Part shown: one piece after another, positions 28,718-64,000 of the stretch
Numbering within the stretch: the first letter of the stretch is position 1
Layout: every line of letters starts with the position of its first letter
IMG/VR virus record: IMGVR_UViG_3300009537_002640
Location: 1-64,000 of that record
Length of the DNA stretch: 64,000 nt
Reading direction: 5' to 3' (one strand)
Position numbers and translations under genes: made by a program
Notes under the pieces: generated by a model
The model's input: only the letters and a program-made list of their open reading frames with translations
Databases searched by the model: none
Told to the model about the DNA's origin: nothing

Positions 28718-28724
28718 TTTAACC

Positions 28725-51092: not shown

Positions 51093-52133
51093 TCAGGCAA
51101 GTAGGCGCTCGTATAGCTCTTTATACCTAAGTGCTTGTTTTTTAACGTTAAATTCTCGCTCTACCAGGTCCCTTCCGGCCTGTCCAAACTGCTGGCACTT
51201 TTTAGGACTATCCTTCAGCTTAATAATAGCGCGAGCGATGCTATTACTATCATTTGGCTTAACGAGAATGCCACTAGTGTCTGCAAGAACAATTTCATTA
51301 GTTTGACCCACATCTGTTGCTACTACTGGCTTACCCAGAGCAGCTGCTTCTATAATAGAGTTTGATATACCATGATGAAATGCTGAACATACATAGAGAT
51401 TAGCTCCTGCCATTATAGGAGCGGGATTATCTAAGGCACCAGTAAATACACAATCATCGCCCATAGGTTTAGCCAGTTTACGCAGTTTAGGACGAATATC
51501 CTCTGCCGAATGCTCTGGCTTATCTCCTATCAGTACTAGCTTTATGTCATGGGTCTTTCTTGCCTTTAGCACAGCATTTAGTAGAACCTCAAATCCCTGT
51601 CCAATACCGCCCATCCTTGCACAATAGCAGACCACAAAATCATCAGGCTTAAAGTGGAGACGGTCGGGTTGAACAGACTTGTAGTAATCAACATCTAGCC
51701 CATTGCGTATTACTTCCAATGGACCCTGATAGTTCTTGCGTATAAGTGGTACTGTTCCCTCATTAGATGCTACTACATAATCCACGCTGCTTCGCCCAAT
51801 ATTGCAAGAACGAGGACCTGCTGTGCGCTCAATCACAATAGGAGGATTCGGAACATTCTTAGCAATCTTTCCGAGCCACTCTTTATTTCCAAACTGCACT
51901 ATATCGGGCTTTTGAGTAATGAGCCTATGGTTGATTGCTTCGAAGTTACTACCCAGATATTCAGCCCTACCTAGCTGATGAAATCTGGAGTTGATGTTCT
52001 TGTTGTCTACTGCTATAAAGCTAAACTCAAAATCACTACATAGTTCCATGCATAGATTTATAAGAAAGGTTGGCCATCCTCCCATATGCAAATCACCAAT
52101 GAGATAGGTTATCTTTGGTTTCACCATGTCCAC
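51093..52133 (-). CDS. Glycosyltransferase family 4
   Basis: LHMGGW, IRNGLD, GISNSIIEAAALGKPVVATDVG. Confidence 0.92.
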   Translation of the reverse strand: MDMVKPKITYLIGDLHMGGWPTFLINLCMELCSDFEFSFIAVDNKNINSRFHQLGRAEYLGSNFEAINHRLITQKPDIVQFGNKEWLGKIAKNVPNPPIVIERTAGPRSCNIGRSSVDYVVASNEGTVPLIRKNYQGPLEVIRNGLDVDYYKSVQPDRLHFKPDDFVVCYCARMGGIGQGFEVLLNAVLKARKTHDIKLVLIGDKPEHSAEDIRPKLRKLAKPMGDDCVFTGALDNPAPIMAGANLYVCSAFHHGISNSIIEAAALGKPVVATDVGQTNEIVLADTSGILVKPNDSNSIARAIIKLKDSPKKCQQFGQAGRDLVEREFNVKKQALRYKELYERLLA

Positions 52134-52483
52134 TCGCCTGCAGCAATTGGACTATCAATTGGCCCAAACTTAATATCGGCGCCCCACAACATATTCTTTC
52201 TAATATGCTTCACAATGCCGGGGTCTTGGGATTGAACCTTAGCCTTAAAATCCTCTAACCACGCTAACGGCAGAACAATGACTAACGCAACGTTACCATG
52301 TTTATCGTGCTGCACCTTGGCTTCGGAAACTTGTCTAACCCAATCATCAGGCATCTCTACCTGTTCTATCTCAAGCTTAGGTTCTGGCCATGGAGCAATA
52401 TTTTCTGGATCAAGCCCTATATCATCTAGTTTCTTCTTTAGCTTGTCTAGTATTACCCGTCTTTCTTCTTTAGTTTTGGTCAT
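52121..52483 (-). CDS. Hypothetical protein
   Basis: Packed ORF. Confidence 0.65.
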   Translation of the reverse strand: MTKTKEERRVILDKLKKKLDDIGLDPENIAPWPEPKLEIEQVEMPDDWVRQVSEAKVQHDKHGNVALVIVLPLAWLEDFKAKVQSQDPGIVKHIRKNMLWGADIKFGPIDSPIAAGEWTW

Positions 52484-52953
52484 CTTTTACCCTTCCAAAA
52501 ACAAATAGTAAATCTATCATCAAGTATCTCTTCTAGCACAGGACGAACATCAACCCATCTAAGGTTTCCGTTATTAACCCCCGGTGCTGGTATCAAAACC
52601 TTCTTCCAGGAATTTGCATCAGCTATCTCAACTATCTGTTGGGCTGATTTTCTTATCAACTCAATATCACTATCTTCCCACGGAGAATGCTTTGTAGGAA
52701 AAGCTAGAACGCTCAGAAATCGTTTCTCTATCTTAAACGTCTCAATCACCTGACAGCGGTTTCCGTTTTTCTTTACCTTCTGTCCAGCAGTAATATCCAT
52801 ACCAGGAAACCTATCACGAAATTGCTTGGCAACCCCTGCACCCATTATAAGGGCGCCATTCTTCTTAATAGAACCATTAGAGGTGAAGCATATAGCATCT
52901 GCTTTGCTTAACGCCTCGGCTGAAAGAACGTTTAGTTTCCTTGCAATTTTCAT
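52480..52953 (-). CDS. Macrodomain (ADP-ribose binding/hydrolase) protein
   Basis: ADAICFTSNG...MGAGVAKQFRDRFP, FPTKH.W.DS...I, PAPGVNNGNL.W..V. Confidence 0.85.
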   Translation of the reverse strand: MKIARKLNVLSAEALSKADAICFTSNGSIKKNGALIMGAGVAKQFRDRFPGMDITAGQKVKKNGNRCQVIETFKIEKRFLSVLAFPTKHSPWEDSDIELIRKSAQQIVEIADANSWKKVLIPAPGVNNGNLRWVDVRPVLEEILDDRFTICFWKGKR

Positions 52954-53159: not shown

Positions 53160-53445
53160 TTTCTAACCTCAGTTTAATAATAGGTGCGGGGCTTATGTGT
53201 GGAAACCTTAGCACCCTGCCCCTCATTCGTATCTTTAGTTTCTCTAACCAAGAAGGCTCATACAGCTCTGTATACACTAAAGTAAAGGGCTCGCCATATC
53301 TGTCCATATTGTAATACATGGCGTTCAGATGGCTTTCTTTTACATAAACATCTCCCTGCTTATATATCTTAACCATGCCAATATTTACATCGTGTTTTAG
53401 TAAGCCTAAATATGTGCCTACTACGCTGGTTCTAGTAAACATCAA
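53152..53445 (-). CDS. Hypothetical protein
   Basis: Packed ORF. Confidence 0.6.
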   Translation of the reverse strand: MMFTRTSVVGTYLGLLKHDVNIGMVKIYKQGDVYVKESHLNAMYYNMDRYGEPFTLVYTELYEPSWLEKLKIRMRGRVLRFPHISPAPIIKLRLENG

Positions 53446-53999
53446 ACCTCAATCACTTTCTCGAAGTAGTTGAATATAAACTCTGCCCTCTCTTCATCAG
53501 TGGTGGGCACTTCAATCAACGGAACCTTGTGCTTATCCAGAAATGACCTAAGCAACTTGTGATTTTCCTTCGACCCCTCTTCTGATTCAAATCTACCCCG
53601 CGTATCATATGGCTTGTTTCTCCTCAGCCAAAAGTTGTGATGAATAACCCCATTCTCTTGGGCATAATCCATAAAGTTGTGGACTGCTGGAGAAATAATT
53701 TCTTTACCCACATATCTCTGTTCATAGAATGCTGATAGCCACAAAGGACTATCGGTGATTATGTAGTCTACCTTATCATACAGGATGGACTCTCTCCGTG
53801 CCTGCTTTCCGAAAATGTACGCTTGATCAAATTTGCCCGGAAGACGTTGTTCCCAAGCCATCGTTTTTACATATTCGGAAACCAACTCTGTGTGCCTTCC
53901 TGCCATTTTAAACTTAGCAAATGTTGCAGCAGCTGTGGTTGATTTCCCAACTCCACTCGCACCGAATAAATTAACTACTTTTGTTACCATGTTTGGCAC
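53442..53999 (-). CDS. P-loop nucleotide kinase (NadR/AAA_28-like); likely start ATG 53990
   Basis: [33 protein letters not shown]. Confidence 0.82.
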
Positions 54000-54175: not shown

Positions 54176-55279
54176 TTATGCTTCGCCTTTTGCTACTTTT
54201 AATATTGCGTTAGCTGTTCTCTCATAAGCCTTTCCATCATCAGAAAAGCAATGCTTCTTTGCATAATCTTTGAATGCAGGAATATCATCGGGTTTGATTT
54301 CATAACTATATGAATTCAACACTGTGGCTAATTCCCCCATCTCTGCATCTATCATTGTTTTTGGGTCTGCTGGCCAGTTTGTTACATACTTGCGTCTATT
54401 GATATTCACAAGAGGCTTTGGAAACAAGCAGGTCTCCATAGCTATACTAGAACGAACATTTAGGACAACATCACATGCTCTAATGGCCCTGTATCCTTCT
54501 TCAGCTTTTACAACTGCTATTCCGGGTGCAAAATTCTGCCATGAATGTTTACCTTCATAATGTTGATTTTTGTGAACTATCCCTACCTGTGCTGGCATAC
54601 TAGCCGTGTAATCAAGAGGATGCGCCTTTACCATTATCTCATAGTCCGGGCATTGTTGTTTTACTATACTAACTATTTCGGAATATTCATTGTTTACACC
54701 ATGCTGATGTCCAAGCTCTCCAGGATTGGCAGGAGTGAGTATTGCAAGCTTCTTTTCTGGATTTAGCCCATAAGACTCCATGAATACCTTTCGATTTGCA
54801 GTAATCGTGGCCGCAGCGTCATAGTGTATTGTACCCGTTGTGAAGATATTTTTATAGGTTTTTGGAAACTTTTTCAGGGTGGCAAGCTTTAGTTCCTTGC
54901 TCTTTGCGGTGAGATAGTGAGCCGGGCATTGTCTTACACGAATATCAATTCCTGATGGGTCGTACATAAAAACTATTCTGCCAAACTTACGAGCCGATAG
55001 TGCGGCTTCACCTCCGGCACCCTTGTAAGCAAAACGAGAGACTATAATGTCACCTTTTTTAGTTAGCCTGTCGTCTGCTATATACATCGGTTTAGATATA
55101 GTTTTTATATTTAGCGCATTAAACCTTTCAGCGAATCTCGGTGTGGTTAACCTAATATCGCCCTCTTGTAACACATACGTCACATCAAGTCCGAGTTCTT
55201 CTAATTTGTGATAGAGCGGAAACTCTAAAAAAGGAAACGTGGGTAAAAACAAATCGCTGTATATAAACACTCTAGTCAT
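54176..55279 (-). CDS. GT-B fold transferase (CDP-glycerol phosphotransferase / capsule KpsS / UDP-GlcNAc epimerase-like)
   Basis: TGTIHYD, VKAHP, CDVVLNVRSSIAMETCLFPKPLV. Confidence 0.7.
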   Translation of the reverse strand: MTRVFIYSDLFLPTFPFLEFPLYHKLEELGLDVTYVLQEGDIRLTTPRFAERFNALNIKTISKPMYIADDRLTKKGDIIVSRFAYKGAGGEAALSARKFGRIVFMYDPSGIDIRVRQCPAHYLTAKSKELKLATLKKFPKTYKNIFTTGTIHYDAAATITANRKVFMESYGLNPEKKLAILTPANPGELGHQHGVNNEYSEIVSIVKQQCPDYEIMVKAHPLDYTASMPAQVGIVHKNQHYEGKHSWQNFAPGIAVVKAEEGYRAIRACDVVLNVRSSIAMETCLFPKPLVNINRRKYVTNWPADPKTMIDAEMGELATVLNSYSYEIKPDDIPAFKDYAKKHCFSDDGKAYERTANAILKVAKGEA

Positions 55280-55376
55280 ATTTCTTTTCTCTTAACATTA
55301 TCTTGCCTATTATAATAACTGACGCTGGCACCACTACTGCTGCAATCATTATGACTGCTCCTATATAACCTATCAT
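55272..55376 (-). CDS. Small single-pass membrane protein (34 aa)
   Basis: Manual translation MIGYIGAVIMIAAVVVPASVIIIGKIMLREKKYD; exactly bridges two genes. Confidence 0.55.
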   Translation of the reverse strand: MIGYIGAVIMIAAVVVPASVIIIGKIMLREKKYD

Positions 55377-55978
55377 CTCAATCCCTTAGCATTATGAGTT
55401 ATTGACTCATCATGCATTGTATAACGATAAAGAGGGATGGGTATGTTGTATATCCTATACTTCTTCAAAAATCTATTTCTGAAGTCTACATCCTCTCTCG
55501 GTAGCCTCTCATCATAAAGCCCAATATCTATCAATTGATCCACCCTATACATGACACCACAGGCTATTGGCCAAGTATCACCATTTCTACGACGCAAAAT
55601 ATTCTCTTTTAAATCCACTTCATAGTAATCTGAAGATGTGGCATCCATATCTTTATTTGATGCGAGAAACAGTTGGTGCACTTTTAGAAAATCTTGATTT
55701 ACATAATCATCTGCATCAACTCTAACTATCAATTTACCTAACGCTGCCTGAATAGCCTTATTACAGGTAGCCGCCAAGCCCAAATTTTCATCGTTGTATA
55801 TTGCTCGCACTTTGTCTTCATTCATAGAAATTATATCTCGACTATTGTCGGTGCTGCAATCATCAATAACAATAATTTCATACTCGTCACTATGATAGGA
55901 TTGGGTAAGGAGGGACCTTATACATCTTGGCAGAAATCTTCCATAATTATAATTAGTAACTATTACTGACACTTCCAT
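55373..55978 (-). CDS. Glycosyltransferase family 2
   Basis: VSVIVTNYNYGRFL, IDDCSTD, NLGLA, RVDADD. Confidence 0.92.
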   Translation of the reverse strand: MEVSVIVTNYNYGRFLPRCIRSLLTQSYHSDEYEIIVIDDCSTDNSRDIISMNEDKVRAIYNDENLGLAATCNKAIQAALGKLIVRVDADDYVNQDFLKVHQLFLASNKDMDATSSDYYEVDLKENILRRRNGDTWPIACGVMYRVDQLIDIGLYDERLPREDVDFRNRFLKKYRIYNIPIPLYRYTMHDESITHNAKGLR

Positions 55979-56328
55979 TATTTATTCCTCGGCAACATAG
56001 TTTGATACAGTACACGGGGCATGAAATCGCGCATATTGTTATATACCTGGCTGAAAATTTGTCCCTTGCATGCTTCACACTTTCTACTGCACTTTTGTCC
56101 ATCATACGCAATGTGAGTAACTATACGAATTTTCCATCTGGTTTCGCAGCACTTAGGACAATTGTTGGAACGCTTACAGAACTTTCCATTTACATGATTA
56201 TGTTTTAACTCATCACTAAATGCTGCCTCTTTGATTGCCAGAGTGCAGGATGCGCAATCACACTTTCTACGACTATAAACTCGTCCATGATGATACTTAC
56301 AGTTCTCTACCATGTATCCGTGATTCAT
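55978..56328 (-). CDS. Cys/His-rich hypothetical protein (putative Zn-binding)
   Basis: HGRVYSRRKCDCASC, CPKCC and CEAC motifs. Confidence 0.6.
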   Translation of the reverse strand: MNHGYMVENCKYHHGRVYSRRKCDCASCTLAIKEAAFSDELKHNHVNGKFCKRSNNCPKCCETRWKIRIVTHIAYDGQKCSRKCEACKGQIFSQVYNNMRDFMPRVLYQTMLPRNK

Positions 56329-56330
56329 CT

Positions 56331-57494
56331 TTAAACCCTTATTAGTTCTTTTATAGCTTGTAGTGCTCTCTTGTGGTGTTGCCCATCAAACGTTAAGCCC
56401 AAATCAAACATATGCTTATTTTGATTTTGTAGCTGCACTGCGTTGTCTGAATTAACTGCTGTGAGAATAATCTCTTCAAACACATCTTGGCTATCTGCAT
56501 GATATGCACAATCGTTCTTAATGGTATCCAGATTGTCGTTTCCTCCAGCAAATACATTATCTGCCACCCTAACTATAACAAGTGGCTTATTTGCTAAACA
56601 CGCCTCAATTTCTACAGTGGACCTTCCTGCCAGAACTATAACATCGGTGGCAGCAATAATAGGATAAGGATCACCAAAGGGCGCGACGAACTTAACATAA
56701 GGACTTTCTTTCAAAGACATAAATTCGTCTATAATCTCTACTGCCCAAGCTTCGCCTGACTTGGCCTTGATATCAATAAAGCTAAATGTATTTTCTTTTT
56801 TAGGTTTTACCACTAACAACCAGTTGTTTTTTTCTGCCAGTTTGGCCAATTTAATAACAGACAAATAAAAATCTACAGAGTGCGCTATGAAATCGCTTCG
56901 GCCATACTTGTGTCCAAAGATAGTTACAATCTTATTAGCCTGAGAGTTTTCTAACAAAGCCCTTCTACACTCATTACTTCGTTGTACTCTGTCATATAGT
57001 ACATCAAATTGTGGTAGGGCATTTAACACAATCTTCTCTGAGGGTACATTGGCATTGTTCATAAGCAAAGTTCTAAAATTATGTATGCCTCCCAGTAATA
57101 AATCAAAATTAGCCCAAGTTTCAGAGAATGATCGCTTTACATTAGCTGGGCTTGCGTCCCAAACTCCGTGACCAACATATACAATTTTCATACCATATTT
57201 TTTCATCTTAGTATGCCAAGTCCCAGAATTATGACACTGAACCACCACATTTGGCTTTTGATTCTTAAGAGAAAATTTGAAATGATAATCTATGTCATAT
57301 TTATAATGAGGCAATTGCAACCCTTTAGAAGAAATAAAGTTGGGTGTACATGCAAATTGCTTGATACCCTTCTCAGGCTTAAATGACTCGAAGACCCTAA
57401 CATGCTCTCTTTTCATAAAGTGGTACATTATGCGTTTCTGTTTTTCCACCTTTTTCTGTTCTGTCAACGTTGTGGCTTTCAATTTTTTGCCCAT
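56331..57494 (-). CDS. GT-B fold transferase (CDP-glycerol phosphotransferase/KpsS-like)
   Basis: VGHG, ALPQFD, VVKPK, TDVIVLAGRSTVEIEACLANKPLV. Confidence 0.7.
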   Translation of the reverse strand: MGKKLKATTLTEQKKVEKQKRIMYHFMKREHVRVFESFKPEKGIKQFACTPNFISSKGLQLPHYKYDIDYHFKFSLKNQKPNVVVQCHNSGTWHTKMKKYGMKIVYVGHGVWDASPANVKRSFSETWANFDLLLGGIHNFRTLLMNNANVPSEKIVLNALPQFDVLYDRVQRSNECRRALLENSQANKIVTIFGHKYGRSDFIAHSVDFYLSVIKLAKLAEKNNWLLVVKPKKENTFSFIDIKAKSGEAWAVEIIDEFMSLKESPYVKFVAPFGDPYPIIAATDVIVLAGRSTVEIEACLANKPLVIVRVADNVFAGGNDNLDTIKNDCAYHADSQDVFEEIILTAVNSDNAVQLQNQNKHMFDLGLTFDGQHHKRALQAIKELIRV

Positions 57495-57509
57495 TGGGAA
57501 CTCCCGGGT

Positions 57510-58187
57510 TTACACTTTTACAACCACTAACTCTCTCGCCCCATTAGTTTGTACTTCCTCTGGCAATGGAATTACTTGTGGGTCGTAGCCCAAATCCTTA
57601 TATATCGATACTAAATCAGGATTCCATTGCACCTGGTCTGACACTTTGTAGGTTGGCTTCATGTGCTTTGGCCCAGCAGCAACCTCATTATTTCCTAGTT
57701 GTTCTAGATGCATTACATACTTAAATGCAGCAGGAACTATCTGAACCTCTATCACATTTCGCATTGTTTCGGGCGGAACATGTATTAGCACACCAGAAGT
57801 AAATATAATGTCCGCCTCCCAGTTCACAAAGTCTAAATCATGCAAGTCTTCACATAGCAACCTAACATCTGAACCTAGTTTTTCTTGGGCGAATTTAACT
57901 GCCTTAGGGTTCACTTCTACGCCACTCACCTGTTTGTCTGGAAAGGCTTCCCTAATGTATCGTAAGTTTCTGCCAGCAAAGAAACCTACCTCACCTATAG
58001 AATCAAATTCATAATTTCTAAGTTGTTCCACAAACCACTTAGAGCGCTTGGTTGCTGGAGGCGAGTCCCAATACGACTGAATAATCTTTAAGTCTTTTCC
58101 TGCCCAATGTTGAGCCTGTGTTTTCTTATCTACCATTACACTCTCCCTTAATAGCTTCACATATTCTTTCGCACGCATGACCATCAA
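57510..58187 (-). CDS. Class I SAM methyltransferase (similar to pseudaminic-acid-associated methylases)
   Basis: EVGFFAGRNL, GVEVNPKAV, DIIFTSGVLIHVPP. Confidence 0.82.
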   Translation of the reverse strand: MMVMRAKEYVKLLRESVMVDKKTQAQHWAGKDLKIIQSYWDSPPATKRSKWFVEQLRNYEFDSIGEVGFFAGRNLRYIREAFPDKQVSGVEVNPKAVKFAQEKLGSDVRLLCEDLHDLDFVNWEADIIFTSGVLIHVPPETMRNVIEVQIVPAAFKYVMHLEQLGNNEVAAGPKHMKPTYKVSDQVQWNPDLVSIYKDLGYDPQVIPLPEEVQTNGARELVVVKV

Positions 58188-59208
58188 TATCGCATAGGTA
58201 GTGATTAACTAAACCTACGGTATCACAATCTATAGGATTAGACAAAATATCCAGCAATCCTTTTTGATCGTAGGCTACTGGCAAATACTGGTGATAATCA
58301 GGTAAACCATCAAAATCCCTGGATTCGCCAAATAAAATATATACGATGGGCTTATTGAGTATTGCCGCCTCTAATAACATAGTACTGGCGAACCCCGCAA
58401 CAACATCTGAGTGCACCAACAATTCTCGTGCCACTTGAGTAGATGATTCCCATATATCTGGGATAATCTTAATATCAACGCTTGGGTTGTCGAGCCTGGC
58501 CTTCATTACATCAGATACATACATATCGTATTTGCTATAGCTTTTCCAGGTTTGAGGATGAACTTTAATCACTATCTGGTGATTGCCCGTGCTTTTAGCA
58601 AAATGCTCCAGAGCTAATATTGAGTCGTCCCTTACTTTATCTATGTTGACGTCTACAATTTTTCCATTTGACTCTTGAGAAAATAGAGGCGGATAGTCGG
58701 GAAAGAATATCCATTTTCTAGATAGTTCTAAACCATACTTGTTCGCTACCTCTTCTCTAGATTGGTAGGAGTTATCCATATACAACTCAAATCTTGGGTA
58801 GCCTGTTATATATGTGGTAGTTAGGTCTTCCCAAAAATTGGCGTAATTTTGTCCTGGAGCAAATACTGCATCTGGCGTAAAAAAGTACTCTCCGTCTAAC
58901 TTATATTTCGGATGTCTAAACATCGCGCTCTCATGTGCACCGAACTTAAATGGTTCTCGGGGCAAAAGAAATATTTTTAACCCCTGCCCTCTAAGATGTT
59001 GTAGCGTTCGCCTAATAGGTTTTTCCCACACACTGGTTGTAATAGCAAACTTATACTTGCTGTTCACTCGTATGTTCTGTTTAGCTATACGAGATGCTTT
59101 AGTGGGCGGAAAGTCCATCTTAACCTCGAACTTATCTGGGTTCCAAAAAATCGATGGGTCTATATCTATTCCCCAAACTCTAGGATCTAAATATAGCCCA
59201 TGTAACAT
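58126..59208 (-). CDS. GT-B fold transferase (CDP-glycerol phosphotransferase/KpsS-like)
   Basis: TGYPRFE, IKVHP, SDVVAGFASTMLLEAAILNKPIV. Confidence 0.72.
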   Translation of the reverse strand: MLHGLYLDPRVWGIDIDPSIFWNPDKFEVKMDFPPTKASRIAKQNIRVNSKYKFAITTSVWEKPIRRTLQHLRGQGLKIFLLPREPFKFGAHESAMFRHPKYKLDGEYFFTPDAVFAPGQNYANFWEDLTTTYITGYPRFELYMDNSYQSREEVANKYGLELSRKWIFFPDYPPLFSQESNGKIVDVNIDKVRDDSILALEHFAKSTGNHQIVIKVHPQTWKSYSKYDMYVSDVMKARLDNPSVDIKIIPDIWESSTQVARELLVHSDVVAGFASTMLLEAAILNKPIVYILFGESRDFDGLPDYHQYLPVAYDQKGLLDILSNPIDCDTVGLVNHYLCDIDGHACERICEAIKGECNGR

Positions 59209-59855
59209 TATACTGCCTTTTGCATCAACATCTTACCTCTATTTATGTCTACCTGGATAATGTGTGACACATCTCTACCCCTTATGGCTGCTGGTAAACG
59301 ATTATGGGTGGCATAATAACCCAATTTAGCATAATAATCTATAAGGTTTGGTCTCCATTGAAACTTATCTGCTACGCGCTTAGGGTTTAATTCCTCTGAG
59401 CCCTTTAGTATAAAATCATCACTATACGCTTCAATATGCATCACATATTTGTTCGCTTTGTCGAGACATTTCTTAAGCGCCCTCAAGATTCCATCTGGAG
59501 GTATATGTATCAGGACCCCCATAGTAAACACCATATCATATTTTTTGGTAATATCCATATCATACACACTCTCTCTAGCAAAATCTCCATCTGGCATATT
59601 CTCTCGCGCCCAATCTACACTGTCTTGTGATACATCTATGCCACCGAAACTTTCTAGGGACATCTTGTTTTTAATCACATCCAGGTTCCTGCCGCCCATA
59701 ATACCAACCTCAAATAAAGATTCTATATCATACACCCTGATGTGATTACCAAGCCAATTTGCACGACGGACATGATTTTCATTGTTCCAGTAGGCTTCCA
59801 CCGCATTAGTGGTTTTGCCTCCCCACAATTGAGCCTGGATGTCCCTATATTCCAT
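59208..59855 (-). CDS. Class I SAM methyltransferase, paralog of 57510-58187
   Basis: EVGIMGGRNL, GIDVS, DMVFTMGVLIHIPP. Confidence 0.82.
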   Translation of the reverse strand: MEYRDIQAQLWGGKTTNAVEAYWNNENHVRRANWLGNHIRVYDIESLFEVGIMGGRNLDVIKNKMSLESFGGIDVSQDSVDWARENMPDGDFARESVYDMDITKKYDMVFTMGVLIHIPPDGILRALKKCLDKANKYVMHIEAYSDDFILKGSEELNPKRVADKFQWRPNLIDYYAKLGYYATHNRLPAAIRGRDVSHIIQVDINRGKMLMQKAV

Positions 59856-59856
59856 A

Positions 59857-60564
59857 TCATACCACCTTCTGCATCAGCCTGGAATACTTAACCAAATCTG
59901 CTAGTTCATCTGGAGTTATACTACAGATGTGGTCAAAGCCAGGAGTTGCCTTAGAGAGAGTAAAATGTTTCTCTATAAGCTTTGCTCCTCTTGCTACAGC
60001 TACCAATGATGCCTCTATCCCAAGTGTATGGTCAGAGAACCCATAGTAAAAATCTCCAAATACTGGAGGAAAGTTTAGACTCTTATACTCGGTAGGATAT
60101 TCTGATACGCAATAGAGATACTTTACATTATCAGGAGACTTATCTAATGCCACTGAATTAAATCCCAGAGACATATAGCATTCTTTTCCGGTTGCTACCA
60201 TCTTCTCAGCTAATGGCCTATTAAGCTTAGACACACGACTTGCTATTTTGTGTCGCTTAACACCCAAGTCTTCCATCCATTGTAGCCGCTCTTCATCAAA
60301 AACGCTACACATGAACTCGATGCCTTCTTCATCGCACCAGTCTTTAAGCTGTGCGAATTGCTCTTTGTTAAATTCTAGAGGTTTTACACCAGCATGAATT
60401 TCTGGGTTTGGGTCTTCTCCGTCAGGCCCAAAGAGAGCATCCACCGAATAAGCCTGAAACTTAGCAGCATCAGCTCCAGCAATTGCAGCCTGACGGATTA
60501 ATTCATGCGCCAGGTGTATATTGCCATTATGGTTAATTCCAATCTCAGCAATTATAAACACCAT
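59857..60564 (-). CDS. neuB: Nonulosonic acid synthase (NeuB/PseI/SpsE family), no C-terminal AFP domain
   Basis: IIAEIGINHNG, GADAAKFQ, HKIAS, YCVSEYPT, GFSDHT, IEKHFTL, DHICS. Confidence 0.9.
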   Translation of the reverse strand: MVFIIAEIGINHNGNIHLAHELIRQAAIAGADAAKFQAYSVDALFGPDGEDPNPEIHAGVKPLEFNKEQFAQLKDWCDEEGIEFMCSVFDEERLQWMEDLGVKRHKIASRVSKLNRPLAEKMVATGKECYMSLGFNSVALDKSPDNVKYLYCVSEYPTEYKSLNFPPVFGDFYYGFSDHTLGIEASLVAVARGAKLIEKHFTLSKATPGFDHICSITPDELADLVKYSRLMQKVV

Positions 60565-60574
60565 GTCTTTCTCC

Positions 60575-61300
60575 TCATCTTAATTTCAGTTCTGTTTTCA
60601 CATCACGGTAATCTATGTCGTCCTCATCGCAGGCTTTATCATAAGCCTCTTCGTCGAGTTCATATAGCTCATCCATATTCATACCGTCAGACTTTCTGAT
60701 TTCTTCTTCGTAGCCCACAATAGCCGTTGTGGCATCTTTCCAGCCAAACAACCTATCGTATCTACCATCAGCGCTAGCTAAATCTACAGGGTGCTTCATA
60801 GGCTCTGTAAAATCATAAAATCTAACTTCGTATGGACAAGCCCAATAACAACCTTCAACCGCGATGATGGTATTGTCGGGAGATAACTTAACATCTGCCC
60901 AACAGAAACCAAAACCTTTCTGCGCTGATTCTGGTAGGTAATCCAGACGCTTAGGGTCATCTAATCGAATTATTGTTTGTCCCTGATAGTTCTCACCACA
61001 CAGTAAGTAATCATGCCCATCAGGATGTCCTATCGCCCAGCACTTCCAAAAGCTATGATAGTTTCTATTAACTACCGCTATCACTTCTTTTGTCTTCTTA
61101 TTACGAACTGTGCCACGAGTATAGTTCCAGGTCCCCTTGCCAGTCTTGAAACTCTCGATGGCTAACTCGTATGTGCCACAAGGCGAATCTTCAAACTCTG
61201 TGCTTTCTAAGTTCTTCTTGCTATAGAACTTGCTCTTCTTAAATTCACTTGCATATTCTTTGATGCTTGTAATAAGCTTCTTTGCTAATACCTAAGTCAT
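60575..61300 (-). CDS. Hypothetical protein; the best-supported start is followed by an in-frame TAG at codon 3 (nonsense allele or amber readthrough)
   Basis: AAGGAG-7nt-ATG(61300) ACT TAG, then 69 sense codons with no ATG/GTG/TTG (...SPCGTYELAIESFKTGKGTWNYTRG...) continuing in frame into the track ORF 60575-61084. Confidence 0.65.
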
Positions 61301-61302
61301 TG

Positions 61303-61518
61303 TTAAACTCCTTTGATTTCATCTTCATAGATTGGGGTTGTGATGGGCTCAAAGTCTTCTGCCTCAAGCTTACTATATTCCTCTATAGTTATCTCGCCCC
61401 TAAGTAATTTACCATACCATTTCATAGCTTGAAAATTGGTCTGATATCCTATAACTTTGCGTTCTTGGTTCCGCTTACGACGCTTGGTGAATCTCTTCCA
61501 CCATGTTTCTCGAACCAT
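61303..61518 (-). CDS. Small hypothetical protein
   Basis: GGAGG SD before ATG; overlaps the GNAT gene by 70 nt. Confidence 0.55.
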   Translation of the reverse strand: MVRETWWKRFTKRRKRNQERKVIGYQTNFQAMKWYGKLLRGEITIEEYSKLEAEDFEPITTPIYEDEIKGV

Positions 61519-62093
61519 TCATCCTCCAATACACTAAGCATTGTAGAGTCTATATAGGTGCCATTGGTGAACTGGTTGTGTCGCAATTTGCCATCAACCT
61601 TCATACCAAGCGGCCCAGTGTAAACCCCTAATGCTACGTTGTTATCATATACTTCTGCCCATATCTTATGCAGGTTCATTTCTCTAAACCCAAAGTCAAA
61701 TAGCAGCGTAAGAGCCTCTTTACCTAATCCCTTGCCTCTTGCCTCGGGACTTAAAAAGATACCAAACTCTGCAGAACGTAAACGCCAGTCTACATAGTGT
61801 AAACCGCAGCAGCCAACTAAATCTGGTGCAGGGTTTTGCTTGCCAGTTCCGTAGTCTGTCCAACCCTGTAATGGTGGCGTTTGTACTGGCAGATTCTCAT
61901 GAATCTCAAAGTATACATGATTGTCCGCCATGTTGTTGCCACGGTTTTCGTACCACCACTGCTGTCGTGCCTTACTGATATCCTTCCATTCCCTAAAGTA
62001 TTTGCGCATCTCAGGATCATTCCTTTGCTCGCGCATCCACTCTACATTGGAAGGGTCTATCTCTTTCAGATATACTTTATCACCAACTATCAT
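61449..62093 (-). CDS. GNAT/RimJ-like N-acetyltransferase (PseH-like)
   Basis: WMREQRNDPEMRKYF, VGCCGL, AEFGIFL...RGKGLG, LHKIWAEV. Confidence 0.85.
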   Translation of the reverse strand: MIVGDKVYLKEIDPSNVEWMREQRNDPEMRKYFREWKDISKARQQWWYENRGNNMADNHVYFEIHENLPVQTPPLQGWTDYGTGKQNPAPDLVGCCGLHYVDWRLRSAEFGIFLSPEARGKGLGKEALTLLFDFGFREMNLHKIWAEVYDNNVALGVYTGPLGMKVDGKLRHNQFTNGTYIDSTMLSVLEDEWFEKHGGRDSPSVVSGTKNAKL

Positions 62094-62593
62094 CAGTTAG
62101 TCCTCTTGCTCGTTTTCTTTTTACGAGCGGGCTTCTTAGACGTCTTTTTCTTAGTAGTGGCCTGAGCTATCACCTTATCCTCTTCCGACATAACTATAGC
62201 TGGAGCTGTTTGCTCTTGCGGCAAATTCACCACTATAGGAGTTGTGCCCTTGCTTACAACATGAGTATCTTTATTGTCTTCATCTGAACCATATGCGGAA
62301 GATGGGTCATTAACAAACTCTATCACTATGCACTCAGTCTCGGCCTCTACTTGATGCATAAAACCTGGAGGAATTGATAGAGATGTTCCTGGTTCAAAAG
62401 GAATGCCCTTTATCTGCCCATTCTTAATTACTCTAATGGTAGCTTTTCCGCCCAGAAGATAAAGCACTTTCGTTAGCCTGGTATGAAACACCATGTCGGT
62501 TTTCTTACCTGCTTCTATCTTGTGTACGGCACCACCAACATTACGTGCCTTGTCCCAGACAACTGCCCTGGAACCATAACCTATCTCTGACAT
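62093..62593 (-). CDS. Cupin-domain protein with basic tail
   Basis: FH...KVLYLLGG, SIPPGFMHQVEA; C-terminal KKTSKKPARKKK. Confidence 0.72.
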   Translation of the reverse strand: MSEIGYGSRAVVWDKARNVGGAVHKIEAGKKTDMVFHTRLTKVLYLLGGKATIRVIKNGQIKGIPFEPGTSLSIPPGFMHQVEAETECIVIEFVNDPSSAYGSDEDNKDTHVVSKGTTPIVVNLPQEQTAPAIVMSEEDKVIAQATTKKKTSKKPARKKKTSKRTN

Positions 62594-62603
62594 TGTTTTC
62601 TCC

Positions 62604-63434
62604 TTAATATTTTCTTAGCTTCTCTATGATGGGCTGTTCACTTACATACACAGTCTTAATCCCATCACCCAATATAGTCTCAACCTCACGAGCATCACGG
62701 CACAACTTACGTAAACCGGTTGGCTCCAATGATGCTGCCTGGTCACTACCATACATTGTACGGTCTAAAGTAATGTGTCGTTCAACTACGGCTGCACCTA
62801 GAGATACAGCGAGCAAAGTTGGTAATAGTCCCTTTTCATGCCCGCTGAAGCCGACGCCCTTTGAATCTGGGTATCTTTCGGTGAGAGTCTTAACAACACG
62901 AATATTAGACTCCCTGATGTCGGTTGGGTATGTAGAAGTGCAATGCATAACTGTAAAAGGACACTTGTGCTTCCTAAATATTTCTACTGCATGGTCAACC
63001 TGTTCTAGGGTACTCATACCCGTAGATATATAGGTGTGCTTTCCTTCTTGAGCTACAGTCTCTAATAGCTCATCGTATGTCAAGAGCGCTGAAGCAATCT
63101 TATTAAACTCTAGGTCATACTGCTGTAAGAACTTCTGGCTTTCTAAATCCCAGGCGGATGCGCTCCATGCTATACCTTTCTCTTTACAGTATCTATCTAT
63201 CTCGTCGTATTCTTCTTTGCCAAACTCTAAGCCTTCTTTCTGCTGCCTGTTGATTGTTCCCCAAGGCGATTCGCGAGACTTATCTAGCTCTTCCTTTGTA
63301 TACACTAAATCAATAGTGCGCTTTTGAAACTTAACAGCATCACATCCTGCATCTACTGCCAGGTCGATTAGCTTCTTGGCAATTCCCAAGTCACCATTGT
63401 GATTAATGCCTATCTCGGCTATAATATAAACCAT
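62604..63434 (-). CDS. neuB: Second nonulosonic acid synthase (NeuB/SpsE family)
   Basis: IIAEIGINHNGD, GCDAVKFQKRT, KIASA, ISTGMST, MHCTSTYP, GFSGHE, ERHITLDRTMYGSDQAASLEP. Confidence 0.93.
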   Translation of the reverse strand: MVYIIAEIGINHNGDLGIAKKLIDLAVDAGCDAVKFQKRTIDLVYTKEELDKSRESPWGTINRQQKEGLEFGKEEYDEIDRYCKEKGIAWSASAWDLESQKFLQQYDLEFNKIASALLTYDELLETVAQEGKHTYISTGMSTLEQVDHAVEIFRKHKCPFTVMHCTSTYPTDIRESNIRVVKTLTERYPDSKGVGFSGHEKGLLPTLLAVSLGAAVVERHITLDRTMYGSDQAASLEPTGLRKLCRDAREVETILGDGIKTVYVSEQPIIEKLRKY

Positions 63435-63438
63435 AACT

Positions 63439-64000
63439 TTACCCCTTATTACAAACTAAAAAGATTGTATCGTGTTTTCTAATGGTTTTAAGAAATGCGG
63501 AATACGCCGCGTTCATAAAACTCAAGCTCTTAAATTTACCTGGCTTACCTCTTAGCAGCCAATACAAATGATTATCGAATGAATATCTCTGTAACCTTAT
63601 TTCTTTCTCTACTAAAAACCTCTCATTGTTTAGTAATTTGGTCAGCGATTTTGGTGTGAAGTATGAACAATGGGCGTTCTGAAAATAGAAGCTCTTGTAC
63701 TTCTCTAGCCCCACCAAGGCGTCATTGAGATTTGGAACCTCCACTATCAGACGACCATTATGACCTAACACATCATAAATATGATGCAAGAAAGGGGCTG
63801 GCTCAGGAATATGCTCTAATACATGAAAGAGGGTTACTGTATCTACCTCTTCCTTCCAATCAGAAATATTGCATAGCCTAACGTCCAGTCCTCTTTCTTG
63901 TGCGCTTCTAACTCGTGCCTCGCTAATATCTACGCCTATAGCTCCATCAATCAAACCAACAAAGTTAGAATAACCAGTGCCAACATCTAAAAGCTTGAGG
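63439..64000 (-). CDS. Class I SAM methyltransferase, 5' end beyond the window
   Basis: The frame stays open to the window edge (LKLLDVGTGYSNF...). Motifs FHVLEHIPEP and LIVEVPN. Confidence 0.85.
   Translation of the reverse strand, partial: LKLLDVGTGYSNFVGLIDGAIGVDISEARVRSAQERGLDVRLCNISDWKEEVDTVTLFHVLEHIPEPAPFLHHIYDVLGHNGRLIVEVPNLNDALVGLEKYKSFYFQNAHCSYFTPKSLTKLLNNERFLVEKEIRLQRYSFDNHLYWLLRGKPGKFKSLSFMNAAYSAFLKTIRKHDTIFLVCNKG

What the first reader, a model, noticed from the sequence alone, without database searches (positions are those of the whole stretch)
54176..63434. Two NeuB paralogs feeding alternating methyltransferase-GT-B gene pairs
In transcription order: neuB(276 aa) ... neuB(235 aa) - MTase - GT-B - MTase - GT-B ... 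GT-B. The two MTases are paralogs (EVG...GRNL; GVLIH.PP), and the three GT-B proteins share the D-V...S...E...KP motif. Both synthases lack the usual C-terminal AFP-like domain. Inference: two different sialic-acid-like sugars, each transferred and O-methylated by a dedicated pair, possibly for host-mimicking or receptor-masking virion glycans. The KpsS-like proteins would be candidate new nonulosonate transferases.
Basis: partly seen in the sequence, partly recalled or inferred. Interest (0 to 1): 0.62.

Follow-up and report, generated by a model that had tools for sequence, protein, structure and literature searches.

The report
Huge-phage nonulosonic-acid glycosylation island
The region is one end of a roughly 50-kb sugar-building island in a very large phage that carries three different sialic-acid-like sugar synthases and five teichoic-acid-type transferases, so the genes are real and unusual for a phage, but the neat "two sugars, two dedicated enzyme pairs" scheme does not hold.

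Summary
On the minus strand lie NeuB (276 aa), cupin, GNAT, a 169-aa ORF, NeuB (235 aa), MTase, GT-B, MTase, GT-B, a 116-aa ORF, a small GT2 and a third GT-B.

The window is the first 64 kb of a 206-kb IMG/VR phage record, and the locus continues past the window end. Further on are a third NeuB, PseB/PseC/PseG-like genes, GNATs, GlmS, two CMP-sugar synthetases, a TagD-like cytidylyltransferase, two more GT-Bs and a Maf-like gene.

- **NeuBs:** the three belong to three deep clades. All keep the metal and catalytic residues. All lack the SAF domain, which is common in environmental NeuBs.
- **GT-Bs:** they fall into three subfamilies, not one set of close paralogs. They are TagB/TagF-like, not KpsS-like. 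Their best family model is that of the Tannerella forsythia Pse/Leg transferase.
- **The GT-B pair between the MTases:** it is an extra copy of a conserved pair about 10 kb further along the record. Related phages keep NeuB-B and both MTases without it.
- **NeuB-B's conserved neighbour:** the small GT2.

Best reading: a soluble, cytoplasmic pathway for several nonulosonic-acid (NulO) sugars, with candidate CMP-NulO transferases. The acceptor is unknown; virion proteins are plausible.

The parts
63439..64000 (-). SAM-dependent methyltransferase, cut by the window end (full gene to genome 64320, 293 aa)
   Evidence: Methyltransf_23 E 1e-15. An ortholog sits at the same place in related phage L008 (50% identity).
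62604..63434 (-). NeuB-A, SAF-less NulO synthase (276 aa)
   Evidence: PF03102 236 bits. TIGR03569 245.9 bits against PseI 173.3, both below the equivalog cut-offs. Best solved structure 6NCS, E 2e-45. Sits in a 100%-supported clade with ~280-aa NeuBs of Alteromonas, Leptospirales and Lachnospiraceae (55-61% identity). H215, H236, E25 and E234 equivalents are kept.
62093..62593 (-). Cupin-like protein (166 aa), conserved between NeuB-A and the GNAT
   Evidence: Weak Cupin_1 hit. Orthologs in L008 and L009.
61449..62093 (-). GNAT N-acetyltransferase (214 aa), weakly PseH-like
   Evidence: Acetyltransf_3 E 5e-16; TIGR03585 PseH E 1.5e-9, below cut-off. 56% orthologs in L008 and L009.
60575..61084 (-). 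Conserved protein of unknown function (169 aa)
   Evidence: No Pfam or NCBIfam hit. A 52% ortholog lies next to the NeuB-B ortholog in L009. The Atlas feature search gave only unnamed clusters.
59857..60564 (-). NeuB-B, 'mini' NulO-synthase homolog (235 aa)
   Evidence: PF03102 167 bits. Member of a large conserved family of 235-250-aa NeuBs, more than 3000 hits, the best 120 at 56% identity or more. 100%-supported clade. Metal and catalytic residues are kept; Tyr at the NmNeuB H181 position in 105 of 120 family members, Arg at the G133 position in all.
59208..59855 (-). SAM methyltransferase 1 (215 aa)
   Evidence: TIGR03587 Pse_Me-ase 62.7 bits, below the cut-off of 112. Paralog of 57510-58187. 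Motifs confirmed.
58126..59208 (-). GT-B type I (360 aa), TagB/BFO_1060-like, candidate transferase using a CMP-linked donor
   Evidence: Glyphos_transf 28.2 bits; NF046086 37.5 bits. 44% identical to genome 68442-69515. AF2 pLDDT 93.4. Best folds TarL Z 20.5, 2-epimerase/NeuC Z 19-20, TagF Z 18. K-x-H-P is invariant in 31 homologs.
57510..58187 (-). SAM methyltransferase 2 (225 aa from the TTG; the true start is probably 17 codons later)
   Evidence: TIGR03587 46.1 bits. The alignment with orthologs begins at the internal Met. 55-64% orthologs follow the NeuB-B ortholog in L008 and L009.
56331..57494 (-). GT-B type II (387 aa), member of a rare family
   Evidence: No Pfam hit. 29% identical to genome 67321-68445. 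Only 74 representatives among 1.84 billion proteins. AF2 pLDDT 92.5. Folds: 2-epimerase Z 24.7, TagF Z 24.1, NeuC Z 21.7, TarL Z 21.1. Homologous to type I by hhalign, 98%. H109-G110 is nearly invariant or invariant, and K-P stands where type I has H-P.
55978..56328 (-). Small conserved ORF (116 aa), unknown function
   Evidence: No family hit. Weak ortholog between the two MTases in L008.
55373..55978 (-). Small soluble GT2 glycosyltransferase (201 aa), conserved partner of the mini-NeuB
   Evidence: Glycos_transf_2 E 4e-29. Solved-structure hit 6P61, E 7.5e-57. Lies immediately after the mini-NeuB in L017 (Omnitrophota MAG), L011 and L012, and near it in L008 and L009.
54176..55279 (-). GT-B type III (367 aa), TagB/BFO_1060-like
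   Evidence: NF046086 46.1 bits; Glyphos_transf 20.4 and Epimerase_2 19.2 bits, both below cut-off. hhalign to the type I profile 89%, with an HP motif (K-A-H-P). 57-61% orthologs in L008 and L009, downstream of the GT2.
51093..52133 (-). GT1/GT4-type glycosyltransferase (346 aa), downstream member of the island
   Evidence: Glyco_trans_1_4 E 3e-27. 41% ortholog in L008.

Best explanation
The region is the window-side end of a glycan island of about 50 kb (window ~38.7 kb to genome ~88 kb) in a very large phage.

The island supplies UDP-GlcNAc precursor through GlmS. It converts that precursor through a PseB/PseC/GNAT/PseG-type route, and condenses hexosamine derivatives with PEP using three divergent SAF-less NeuB-family synthases. 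Acyl-, amino-, pyruvyl- and methyl-transferases then tailor the products. Two CTP_transf_3 enzymes activate the sugars as CMP-sugars.

Five soluble TagB/BFO_1060-like GT-B enzymes are the likely transferases for CMP-linked donors. A small GT2, GT1s and a Maf-like DUF115 protein accompany them.

None of the 44 genes scanned has a convincing membrane segment, and no flippase, polymerase or lipid-priming transferase was recognised among the family-scanned genes. The glycan is therefore most likely assembled in the cytoplasm on a soluble acceptor. Phage (virion) proteins are the most economical guess.

- **Shown:** gene content, folds, paralogy, clade placement and synteny in related phages.
- **Inferred:** the donors (CMP-NulO), the number of distinct sugars, what is methylated, and the acceptor.
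For: **Phage origin**
- The window is bases 1-64000 of a 206,495-bp IMG/VR virus record with CheckV completeness 25%. It carries PhoH, RNR, DnaB and a tubulin-like gene.

**Gene content**
- Three NeuBs.
- PseB 338 bits, PseC 342 bits, a PseG-like gene, PseF 148 bits, a second CTP_transf_3, GlmS 662 bits, two GNATs, a hexapeptide acetyltransferase, a class-III aminotransferase, a pyruvyl transferase and a HAD phosphatase.
- Further sugar dehydratases, reductases, a dehydrogenase and GTs at 38.7-50 kb.

**NeuBs look functional and distinct**
- The NmNeuB E25, K53/Q55, K129/S132, H215, E234/H236 and D247 equivalents are present in all three.
- Each sits in its own conserved clade.
- The clade-typical substitutions are shared with many relatives.

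**GT-Bs**
- Confident GT-B models.
- The nearest solved folds are enzymes of CMP-releasing or nucleotide-sugar chemistry: TarL, TagF, the Cps polymerases and 2-epimerases.
- The best curated model is the BFO_1060 family, at 20-60 bits, for all five. That family's type member is needed for Pse/Leg addition in T. forsythia (PMC5420450).
- Type I homologs lie inside NulO gene clusters in every context sampled: L006/L007, L009, L010, L097 and this record twice. L098, a 4.4-kb fragment, shows only a DegT aminotransferase beside the gene.
- Structurally similar GT-B domains occur in viral proteins named cytidylyltransferase or acylneuraminate cytidylyltransferase (Hokovirus, an uncultured Caudovirales phage). 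The TM-scores are low.

**Maf-like gene**
- All 4 members of its family hit PF01973, best E 2.5e-8.

**Soluble pathway**
- None of the 44 proteins scanned has a convincing TM segment.
Against: - No enzyme here, and no member of the NeuB-A clade, the mini-NeuB family or GT-B types I to III, has been assayed to my knowledge.
- All NeuB, Pse-pathway, methylase and BFO_1060 scores fall below the curated equivalog cut-offs.
- A TagB-like GT-B next to NulO genes is not proof of function. B. subtilis SpsB has the same motifs and the same neighbourhood, yet is not required for legionaminic acid transfer (PMC7439481).
- The island also encodes a TagD/CCT/ECT-like cytidylyltransferase. Some GT-Bs could therefore use a CDP-alcohol donor instead.
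- There are three synthases but only two obvious CMP-NulO synthetases and one PseG-like hydrolase.
- The sampled contexts all come from one phage lineage, so the linkage evidence is not independent.
- Nothing bears directly on the acceptor.
Confidence: 0.55

Rival explanations
1. Some or all of the TagB/TagF-like GT-Bs are true alcohol-phosphate transferases, as in teichoic acid synthesis. They would use a CDP-activated alcohol (glycerol-, ribitol-, choline- or ethanolamine-phosphate or similar) made by the small HxGH cytidylyltransferase, and add phosphodiester-linked groups to the glycan. NulO transfer would then be done by the Maf-like, GT2 or GT1 enzymes.
For: - Top fold hits are TarL (Z 20.5) and TagF (Z 18-24).
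- Pfam Glyphos_transf is above its cut-off for type I (28.2 bits) and for its paralog (32 bits).
- A TagD/CCT/ECT-like cytidylyltransferase is conserved in the island and in L006, L009 and L010.
- Type II keeps an H-G pair in the N-domain. From my memory of TagF/TarL, their catalytic His sits there.
- SpsB is a precedent for a TagB-like enzyme that is not a Leg transferase.
Against: - BFO_1060-family scores exceed the TarB/TarF scores wherever both appear (59.6 against 33.1 and 29.8 bits).
- Type I has R-E where type II has H-G.
- Five such enzymes against one small cytidylyltransferase, but two CMP-NulO synthetases and three synthases.
Confidence: 0.2
2. The type II GT-Bs (56331-57494 and genome 67321-68445), and perhaps others, are not transferases. 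They would be NeuC/PseG-like nucleotide-sugar hydrolases or 2-epimerases that make the six-carbon substrates for NeuB-A and NeuB-B. Those two synthases otherwise lack a dedicated hydrolase.
For: - The best fold match of type II is UDP-GlcNAc 2-epimerase (Z 24.7), with NeuC at Z 21.7.
- Only one PseG-like gene is present for three synthases.
- Type III has a weak Epimerase_2 hit.
Against: - None of the 32 type II family members hits PF02350, whereas 2 hit Glyphos_transf and 5 hit Glyco_transf_4.
- TagF scores as well as the epimerase (Z 24.1, a tie).
- Type II is homologous to type I, which is BFO_1060/TagB-like.
Confidence: 0.12
3. The island remodels the host cell surface during infection or carriage, for receptor masking or superinfection exclusion. 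It would feed CMP-sugars and glycans into host export machinery rather than decorate virions.
For: - Surface-glycan modification is a common phage strategy (own knowledge).
- In the bacteria-like contigs L011 and L012 the mini-NeuB + GT2 pair sits beside an ABC exporter.
- Phage-borne NulO-modifying enzymes that act on host capsules are reported for Acinetobacter (PMC12053666 and PMC6586298, titles and abstracts).
Against: - The 44 island genes scanned include no membrane protein, and the family scans recognised no flippase, polymerase, priming phosphotransferase or exporter.
- A Maf-like protein-directed enzyme is present.
- The investment is very large for a phage with no sign of lysogeny in the window.
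Confidence: 0.3
4. One reading: two sialic-acid-like sugars, each with its own dedicated MTase plus GT-B pair.
For: The gene order NeuB - MTase - GT-B - MTase - GT-B is real, and the MTases are paralogs.
Against: - The two GT-Bs belong to different subfamilies. Each is closest to a gene of the adjacent pair at genome 67.3-69.5 kb.
- L008 has NeuB-B and both MTases without these GT-Bs, and L009 has one MTase.
- NeuB-A's conserved neighbours are a different MTase, a pyruvyl transferase and PseF. NeuB-B's conserved neighbour is the small GT2.
- There are three synthases, not two.
Confidence: 0.08

Closest known systems
Tannerella forsythia Pse/Leg-derivative transferases (Tanf_01245, TFUB4_00887, BFO_1060; NCBIfam NF046086)
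   Same: TagB-like GT-B proteins encoded beside a CMP-NulO pathway and a methyltransferase. They have an HP motif. This is the best curated family match for all five phage GT-Bs.
   Different: The phage proteins score only 20-60 bits against a 200-bit cut-off. They are 357-387 aa against 442-445 aa. Type II lacks the HP motif. No genetic or biochemical evidence exists for them.
TagF/TarL/TagB CDP-alditol phosphotransferases (Pfam PF04464)
   Same: Nearest solved folds (TarL Z 20.5-21.1, TagF Z 18-24.1). They share a C-terminal domain that binds a CMP-bearing donor, and the G-x-P-R-x-D and S-T-x-x-x-E-x...K-P stretches.
   Different: They sit in a NulO gene context, not a teichoic-acid context. 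Type I has R-E where type II has the H-G pair. The proteins are soluble, about 360 aa, and lack the membrane-binding N-terminal region of TagF/TarL.
Bacillus subtilis sps operon (SpsA GT2, SpsB TagB-like, SpsC-G legionaminic acid pathway)
   Same: The same gene kit: GT2, a TagB-like GT-B, a DegT aminotransferase, a GNAT, NeuB (SpsE) and a CTP_transf_3. It decorates a proteinaceous surface, the spore crust.
   Different: SpsE has a SAF domain. The operon has one synthase, not three. SpsB was shown not to be needed for Leg transfer, which is a warning for the phage GT-Bs.
SAF-less environmental NulO synthases (for example the solved structure 6NCS, 290 aa; 'group I' of PMC8208679)
   Same: NeuB TIM-barrel domain only. 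The position of NmNeuB E134 is non-acidic or Asp. NeuB-A is 55-61% identical to members from Alteromonas, Leptospirales and Lachnospiraceae.
   Different: NeuB-B is shorter still (235 aa, with a deletion after the S-x-G strand). It belongs to a separate mini-NeuB clade found mostly on metagenomic, largely phage-like, contigs.
Maf (motility-associated factor) flagellin NulO glycosyltransferases (Pfam PF01973, formerly DUF115)
   Same: The island gene at genome 66569-67324 and its three phage orthologs all hit PF01973 and lie in a NulO cluster.
   Different: It is 251 aa, the core domain only, whereas Maf proteins are much longer (own knowledge). Its own score of 20.5 bits is below the cut-off of 34.6. 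It lies outside the window.

Membership tests
NeuB / NulO synthase (PF03102) | NeuB TIM-barrel domain above the Pfam gathering score | tested here: met
   236.4, 166.8 and 221.1 bits against a cut-off of 22.1, for NeuB-A, NeuB-B and NeuB-C.
NeuB / NulO synthase (PF03102) | Metal ligands and catalytic or substrate residues (NmNeuB E25, K53, K129, H215, E234, H236, D247) | tested here: met
   All are present in all three (alignments). The E134 position is L, V and D in A, B and C. It is non-acidic in most of the 80 nearest cellular relatives too.
NeuB / NulO synthase (PF03102) | C-terminal SAF (antifreeze-like) domain contributing R314 | tested here: not met
   The proteins end at or just after the barrel (276, 235 and 295 aa). 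No PF08666 match was found anywhere in the record at E<=1. SAF is absent from about 30% of NulO synthases, so it is not strictly defining.
N-acetylneuraminate synthase (TIGR03569) or pseudaminic acid synthase (TIGR03586) equivalogs | Score above the curated equivalog cut-off | tested here: not met
   TIGR03569 gives 245.9, 185.6 and 255.7 bits against 399.65. TIGR03586 gives 173.3, 127.2 and 196.4 bits against 340.25. The product sugar cannot be assigned.
BFO_1060-family NulO transferase (NF046086) | Score above the curated cut-off of 200 bits | tested here: not met
   59.6 (genome 68442-69515), 46.1 (54176-55279), 37.5 (58126-59208) and 23.1 bits (56331-57494); none for genome 67321-68445.
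BFO_1060-family NulO transferase (NF046086) | GT-B fold with the HP motif of bacterial sialyltransferases | tested here: met
   Types I and III have K-x-H-P, invariant in 31 type I homologs. The GT-B fold is confident. Type II has K-P-K instead, so the feature is met for types I and III only.
BFO_1060-family NulO transferase (NF046086) | D/E-D/E-G motif | not tested
   No reference sequence was on hand to align. The invariant acidic residues of type I (D15, E85, D113) were not mapped to it.
BFO_1060-family NulO transferase (NF046086) | Transfers a CMP-activated NulO | not testable with these tools
   Only gene linkage to CMP-NulO pathway genes is available.
TagB/TagF/TarL glycerol- or ribitol-phosphate transferases (PF04464) | Pfam domain above the gathering score of 22.1 bits | tested here: inconclusive
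   Type I 28.2 bits and its paralog 32.0 bits pass. Type III at 20.4 bits fails. Type II has no hit, and 2 of 32 family members hit.
TagB/TagF/TarL glycerol- or ribitol-phosphate transferases (PF04464) | Catalytic His in the N-terminal domain (TarL H300, TagF H444) | tested here: inconclusive
   Type II has a nearly invariant H109 followed by G110, and type I aligns R84-E85 there. Residue-level superposition on TarL/TagF could not be done, and the placement of their His is from memory.
KpsS/KpsC capsule Kdo transferases (PF05159) | Capsule_synth domain | tested here: not met
   No PF05159 hit at E<=0.01 for any of the three window GT-Bs. One distant type I homolog, P0020, carries a precomputed PF05159 label.
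UDP-GlcNAc 2-epimerase / NeuC (PF02350) | Epimerase_2 domain above the cut-off of 30.6 bits | tested here: not met
   Only type III hits, at 19.2 bits. None of the 32 type II family members hits. The fold similarity is high (Z 19-25), but that is shared by all GT-B proteins of this branch.
Pse-associated methylase (TIGR03587) | Score above the cut-off of 112 bits | tested here: not met
   62.7 and 46.1 bits. It is the best family for both MTases, but they are not members.
Maf / DUF115 (PF01973) | Domain above the gathering score of 34.6 bits | tested here: inconclusive
   The record's own protein scores 20.5 bits. All 4 orthologs match, best E 2.5e-8. The L009 ortholog carries an unmarked precomputed hit.

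The most novel reading that the evidence does not exclude
A lineage of very large phages (contigs up to 468 kb) builds its own glycan from several NulO-type sugars in the host cytoplasm and attaches it to phage proteins. It would do this with transferase families that, as far as sampled, occur only on phage-like contigs: TagB-like GT-B types I and II, and a minimal Maf. The 235-aa mini-NeuB, which always travels with a 200-aa GT2, would define a new class of PEP-condensing ulosonic-acid synthase with a substrate other than those of Neu, Leg or Pse.

An even bolder version: the TagD-like cytidylyltransferase activates a phosphorylated ulosonic acid through its phosphate, and the TagF-like enzymes lay down phosphodiester-linked NulO units.
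Probability: 0.25. Interest if true: 0.8.

Novelty: new variant of a known kind. Interest (0 to 1): 0.55.

Why it matters
Few nonulosonic-acid (NulO) transferases are known (PMC5420450 calls knowledge of them scarce). The main examples are the classical sialyltransferase families, Maf and FlmG, and the T. forsythia TagB-like enzymes. This island offers five soluble, compact candidates of about 360 aa from three subfamilies, each with confident models, sitting beside their presumed donor pathways. That makes donor and acceptor specificity directly testable.

It also offers three untested SAF-less synthases. One of them represents a large mini-NeuB family of more than 3000 detectable relatives.

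In the collections searched, NeuB homologs were found in only 3 of 50,697 GenBank phage records, and type I GT-B homologs in none. My three literature searches found no description of such an island in large phages.

If the glycan ends up on virions, it would be a phage counterpart of giant-virus fibril glycosylation, with consequences for adsorption, stability and recognition. If it ends up on the host, it would be an unusually elaborate surface-conversion system.

Tried and rejected
- **Searches that found nothing.**
  - Megablast of the region against GenBank phages: no match.
  - Back-translated pattern scan for NeuB-B in IMG/VR: no relative. The same scan with the type I alignment found one locus, L010.
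  - tblastn of type I against GenBank phages: none. NeuB-B found only 3 distant hits.
  - Public sequencing runs: none was listed.
  - ESM Atlas fold library: not available.
  - Type I profile in five bacterial genomes that carry NeuB-A-like or NeuB-B-like genes: no match.
  - Type II profile against solved-structure sequences: nothing meaningful.
  - Terminase_6N in the record: none, and the record is a fragment.
- **An error of mine, corrected.** I first read the His-to-Tyr change in the L-H-C stretch of NeuB-B as loss of a metal ligand. Counting from the alignment, with residue numbers quoted in PMC8208679, shows it is NmNeuB H181. H215 and H236 are intact. "NeuB-B is inactive" is therefore rejected as unsupported.
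- **Rejected labels and claims.** The "KpsS-like" label (no PF05159 hit). "Loss of the AFP domain is unusual".
- **Not achieved.** A labelled Neu/Leg/Pse/Kdn phylogeny. No characterised reference sequences could be brought in by reference, so only clade placement relative to unlabelled cellular homologs was obtained. That tree is a quick IQ-TREE; the careful search did not finish.

Full report
**Where the region lies**

The window is bases 1-64000 of a 206,495-bp IMG/VR virus record. The record is classed as linear, with CheckV completeness of 25%, so it is a fragment of a much larger phage genome. Every gene in the window runs on the minus strand.

The window carries PhoH, a ribonucleotide reductase, a DnaB-like helicase, a TubZ/PhuZ-like tubulin and a PrkA kinase. 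The kinase is 37% identical to those of Thermus phage phiYS40 and of a 595-kb uncultured phage. I take the phage origin as settled. No terminase was found in this fragment.

**The observation**

ORFs and domains match the finding. In transcription order they are:

| Coordinates | Product |
|---|---|
| 62604-63434 | NeuB-A, 276 aa |
| 62093-62593 | cupin-like protein |
| 61449-62093 | GNAT |
| 60575-61084 | conserved 169-aa ORF |
| 59857-60564 | NeuB-B, 235 aa |
| 59208-59855 | MTase |
| 58126-59208 | GT-B type I |
| 57510-58187 | MTase |
| 56331-57494 | GT-B type II |
| 55978-56328 | 116-aa ORF |
| 55373-55978 | small GT2 |
| 54176-55279 | GT-B type III |

- The D-V...S/T...E...KP stretch is present in all three GT-Bs.
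- Both NeuBs end at the TIM barrel. No SAF domain exists anywhere in the record.

The locus runs off the window. Continuing past the window end, which is upstream in transcription, the record encodes, in this order:

- the rest of an MTase, a polysaccharide pyruvyl transferase and a PseF-like CMP-sugar synthetase;
- a HAD phosphatase and a DUF115/Maf-like protein;
- a second type II GT-B and a second type I GT-B;
- a hexapeptide acetyltransferase, a class-III aminotransferase and a GNAT;
- a small HxGH cytidylyltransferase and a second CTP_transf_3;
- a PseG-like protein, a third NeuB (NeuB-C, 295 aa) and GlmS;
- an SDR, PseC, and a PseB with an N-terminal MerR-type HTH.

On the other side, at 38.7-52 kb, there are further sugar genes: an RmlD-like reductase, two 4,6-dehydratase/epimerase-type enzymes, a truncated-looking UDP-glucose dehydrogenase, an MTase, DUF2334 and two GT1s. 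HNH and LAGLIDADG endonuclease genes interrupt this stretch.

More GT1/GT2-like genes lie at genome 85-88 kb. The island therefore spans roughly 50 kb.

**The synthases**

All three score better on the NeuB/NnaB model than on the PseI model, but all fall below both equivalog cut-offs. The product sugars therefore cannot be named.

The residues that matter are conserved in all three. In NmNeuB numbering these are E25, K53/Q55, K129/S132, H215 in S-x-H, E234 and H236 in E-K/R-H, and D247.

I first mistook the His-to-Tyr change in NeuB-B for loss of a metal ligand. It is H181, three residues before N184. Tyr is the family norm there, in 105 of 120 relatives.

The E134 position is Leu, Val and Asp in A, B and C. 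Among the 80 nearest cellular NeuBs it is Ser in 50 and Asp in 11. A published survey also notes E134 variation in environmental enzymes (PMC8208679).

The quick maximum-likelihood tree places the three as follows:

- **NeuB-B** falls in a 100%-supported clade of 235-250-aa "mini-NeuBs". The nearest species-representative genomes are an Omnitrophota MAG at 56% and a Gemmatimonadaceae MAG at 43%.
- **NeuB-A** falls in a 100%-supported clade with ~280-aa SAF-less enzymes of Alteromonas, Leptospirales and Lachnospiraceae, at 55-61% identity.
- **NeuB-C** sits on a long branch apart from both.

They are therefore not recent duplicates, which fits different substrates.

Lack of SAF is ordinary. About 60 of the 80 nearest cellular homologs are 274-320 aa, the best solved structure (6NCS) is 290 aa, and only 70% of 13,941 UniProt NulO synthases carry SAF.

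**The GT-B proteins**

They fall into three subfamilies.

*Type I* (58126-59208):
- It is 44% identical to genome 68442-69515.
- It has 46 relatives in the word search, all from metagenomes.
- K-x-H-P is invariant, and G-Y-P-R-F-D and S-T-M-x-x-E-A...K-P stretches are conserved.
- The model has pLDDT 93.4.

*Type II* (56331-57494):
- It is 29% identical to genome 67321-68445.
- The word search left it almost without relatives (5 hits), so I used the exhaustive search. That found only 74 representatives among 1.84 billion proteins.
- The model has pLDDT 92.5.

*Type III* (54176-55279):
- It matches the type I profile weakly (hhalign 89%) and has K-A-H-P.

Types I and II are homologous only at profile level (98%, E 4e-14). 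In that alignment type I has R84-E85 where type II has the conserved H109-G110, and type II has K-P where type I has H-P.

By fold, both are nearest to TarL, TagF, the TagF-like capsule polymerases and the UDP-GlcNAc 2-epimerase/NeuC group (Z 18-25). No classical sialyltransferase family and no KpsC/KpsS entry appears among the top rows, and no PF05159 hit exists. "KpsS-like" should therefore be replaced by "TagB/TagF-like".

The best curated family for all five is NF046086, at 20-60 bits against a cut-off of 200. That model is named after BFO_1060. Its T. forsythia orthologs are required for adding the terminal Pse or Leg derivative to the S-layer O-glycan, and they were noted to have a TagB domain and HP motif (PMC5420450).

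The warning case is B. subtilis SpsB. It is TagB-like, has HP and DEG motifs and lies next to the Leg pathway, yet it is dispensable for Leg transfer (PMC7439481).

**Synteny in relatives**

Related large-phage contigs share large parts of the island at 26-74% protein identity (most shared genes at 40% or more). They are L006 (167 kb), L008 (81 kb), L009 (468 kb), L010 (IMG/VR, 102 kb) and L097 (60 kb).

1. In L008 the order is NeuB-A, cupin, GNAT, NeuB-B, MTase, small ORF, MTase, GT2, GT-B III. No type I or II lies between the MTases. L009 has a single MTase after NeuB-B.
2. The pair that recurs in L009 and L010 is type I followed (not always directly) by type II and the Maf-like gene, corresponding to the copy at genome 66.6-69.5 kb; L008 shows the type II and Maf-like part. 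It is seen only in this phage and in near relatives (88% and 84% identical proteins on short contigs).
3. The mini-NeuB is followed directly by a homolog of the 201-aa GT2 in the Omnitrophota MAG and in two bacteria-like contigs, where an ABC exporter comes next. It also stays near it in the phages. That GT2 has a close solved relative, 6P61 (E 7.5e-57).

NeuB-A homologs in Alteromonas and a Leptospirales MAG sit beside a PseF-like gene.

The alternating MTase/GT-B pattern is therefore best read as an insertion of a duplicated GT-B pair into an older NeuB-B/MTase array. It is not two dedicated modules.

**Mechanism proposed**

- **Shown:** the gene kit for a UDP-GlcNAc to 2,4-diamino-2,4,6-trideoxyhexose to NulO to CMP-NulO route, with many tailoring enzymes.
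- **Inferred:** three synthases give up to three NulO-type sugars. CTP_transf_3 enzymes activate them. The TagB/BFO_1060-like GT-Bs, whose solved structural relatives bind CMP-bearing donors, transfer them. The MTases, whose best match is the Pse-associated methylase family, methylate the sugar or a substituent.

A hydrophobicity scan of 44 island proteins found no convincing membrane segment. The two windows above threshold lie in GlmS and in a GT-B core. No Wzx, Wzy, ABC exporter or priming phosphoglycosyltransferase was recognised among the family-scanned genes. Together with the Maf-like protein, this points to assembly on a soluble acceptor in the cytoplasm.

Virion proteins are a natural candidate. 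The window also encodes LamG/Big_5 giants of 3634 and 1680 aa that look like surface fibres. Nothing tests this.

The main rivals are set out in their own section. They are phospho-alcohol transfer from a CDP donor made by the TagD/CCT-like enzyme, a NeuC/PseG-like role for type II, and host-surface remodelling.

**Comparison with what is known, and novelty**

Every enzyme class here is known from bacteria. The closest overall analogues are the T. forsythia NulO locus and the B. subtilis sps operon.

What is unusual:
- **The carrier:** a lineage of very large phages.
- **The scale:** about 50 kb, three synthases, five TagB-like GT-Bs.
- **The distribution:** GT-B types I and II were found only on metagenomic contigs, and every context sampled was phage-like.

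Among 50,697 GenBank phage records, only three have any NeuB homolog and none has a type I homolog. Three literature searches found no description of such islands in large phages. That is absence in the library searched, not proof of absence.

I rate it a new variant of a known kind.

**Limits**

- No labelled Neu/Leg/Pse/Kdn phylogeny could be built.
- The tree is a quick one.
- Residue-level superposition on TarL and TagF was not possible.
- No sequencing run was listed, so there are no expression data.
- The linkage evidence comes from related phages and is not independent.

Noticed in passing
window 25681-30719 (- strand): A complete PrkA (AAA_PrkA + PrkA_C) / DUF444 (YhbH-like) / SpoVR triad is encoded by the phage. 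All three have strong Pfam scores (E 1e-97 to 1e-112). The kinase is 37% identical to those of Thermus phages phiYS40 and TMA, and to that of a 595-kb uncultured phage (LR756511).
   Followed up: partly
window 1490-12394 and 12897-17939 (- strand): Two giant ORFs (3634 and 1680 aa) carry Laminin_G_3/ConA-like lectin domains, and one also has a Big_5 domain. They may be virion fibres or adhesins, and so possible carriers or binders of the island's glycan.
   Followed up: partly
L004:3569-4324 (genome 66569-67324, outside the window): A compact 251-aa DUF115/MptE-like (Maf-like) protein is conserved next to the type II GT-B in L008, L009 and L010. All 4 orthologs hit PF01973 (best E 2.5e-8). It is a candidate protein-directed NulO transferase.
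   Followed up: partly
L004:17567-18715 (genome 80567-81715) and orthologs in L006 and L097: The PseB-like 4,6-dehydratase carries an N-terminal MerR/HTH_17-type DNA-binding domain. This fusion is conserved in the related phages, which hints at self-regulation of the island or at a lineage marker.
   Followed up: no
window 40812-41801 and 49437-50243 (- strand): HNH and LAGLIDADG homing-endonuclease-like genes sit among the sugar genes. The neighbouring UDP-glucose dehydrogenase-like ORF (43016-43888, 290 aa) has only the N-terminal and central domains, so it may be split or truncated.
   Followed up: no
window 52480-52953 and 53442-53999 (- strand): A macro-domain protein and an AAA_28 (NadR-type kinase-like) protein lie between the GT-B III and GT1 genes. 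This suggests ADP-ribose or nicotinamide-nucleotide chemistry inside the glycan island.
   Followed up: no
window 37295-38728 (- strand): A tubulin/FtsZ-family GTPase with a TubZ-like C-terminal domain (PhuZ-like), as in phages that organise their replication compartment with a spindle.
   Followed up: no
L011 and L012 (metagenomic contigs), L017 (Omnitrophota MAG): A conserved bacterial module: mini-NeuB (235 aa) followed by a ~205-aa GT2, and in L011 and L012 then by an ABC exporter. It suggests an uncharacterised ulosonic-acid pathway, from which the phage pair NeuB-B + GT2 may derive.
   Followed up: partly
BFVD hits to the type I model: The top viral structural neighbours include a 585-aa Hokovirus 'cytidylyltransferase' and a 545-aa 'acylneuraminate cytidylyltransferase' of an uncultured Caudovirales phage. 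These may be fusions of a CMP-NulO synthetase with a GT-B domain. The TM-scores are low and the domain layout was not checked.
   Followed up: no
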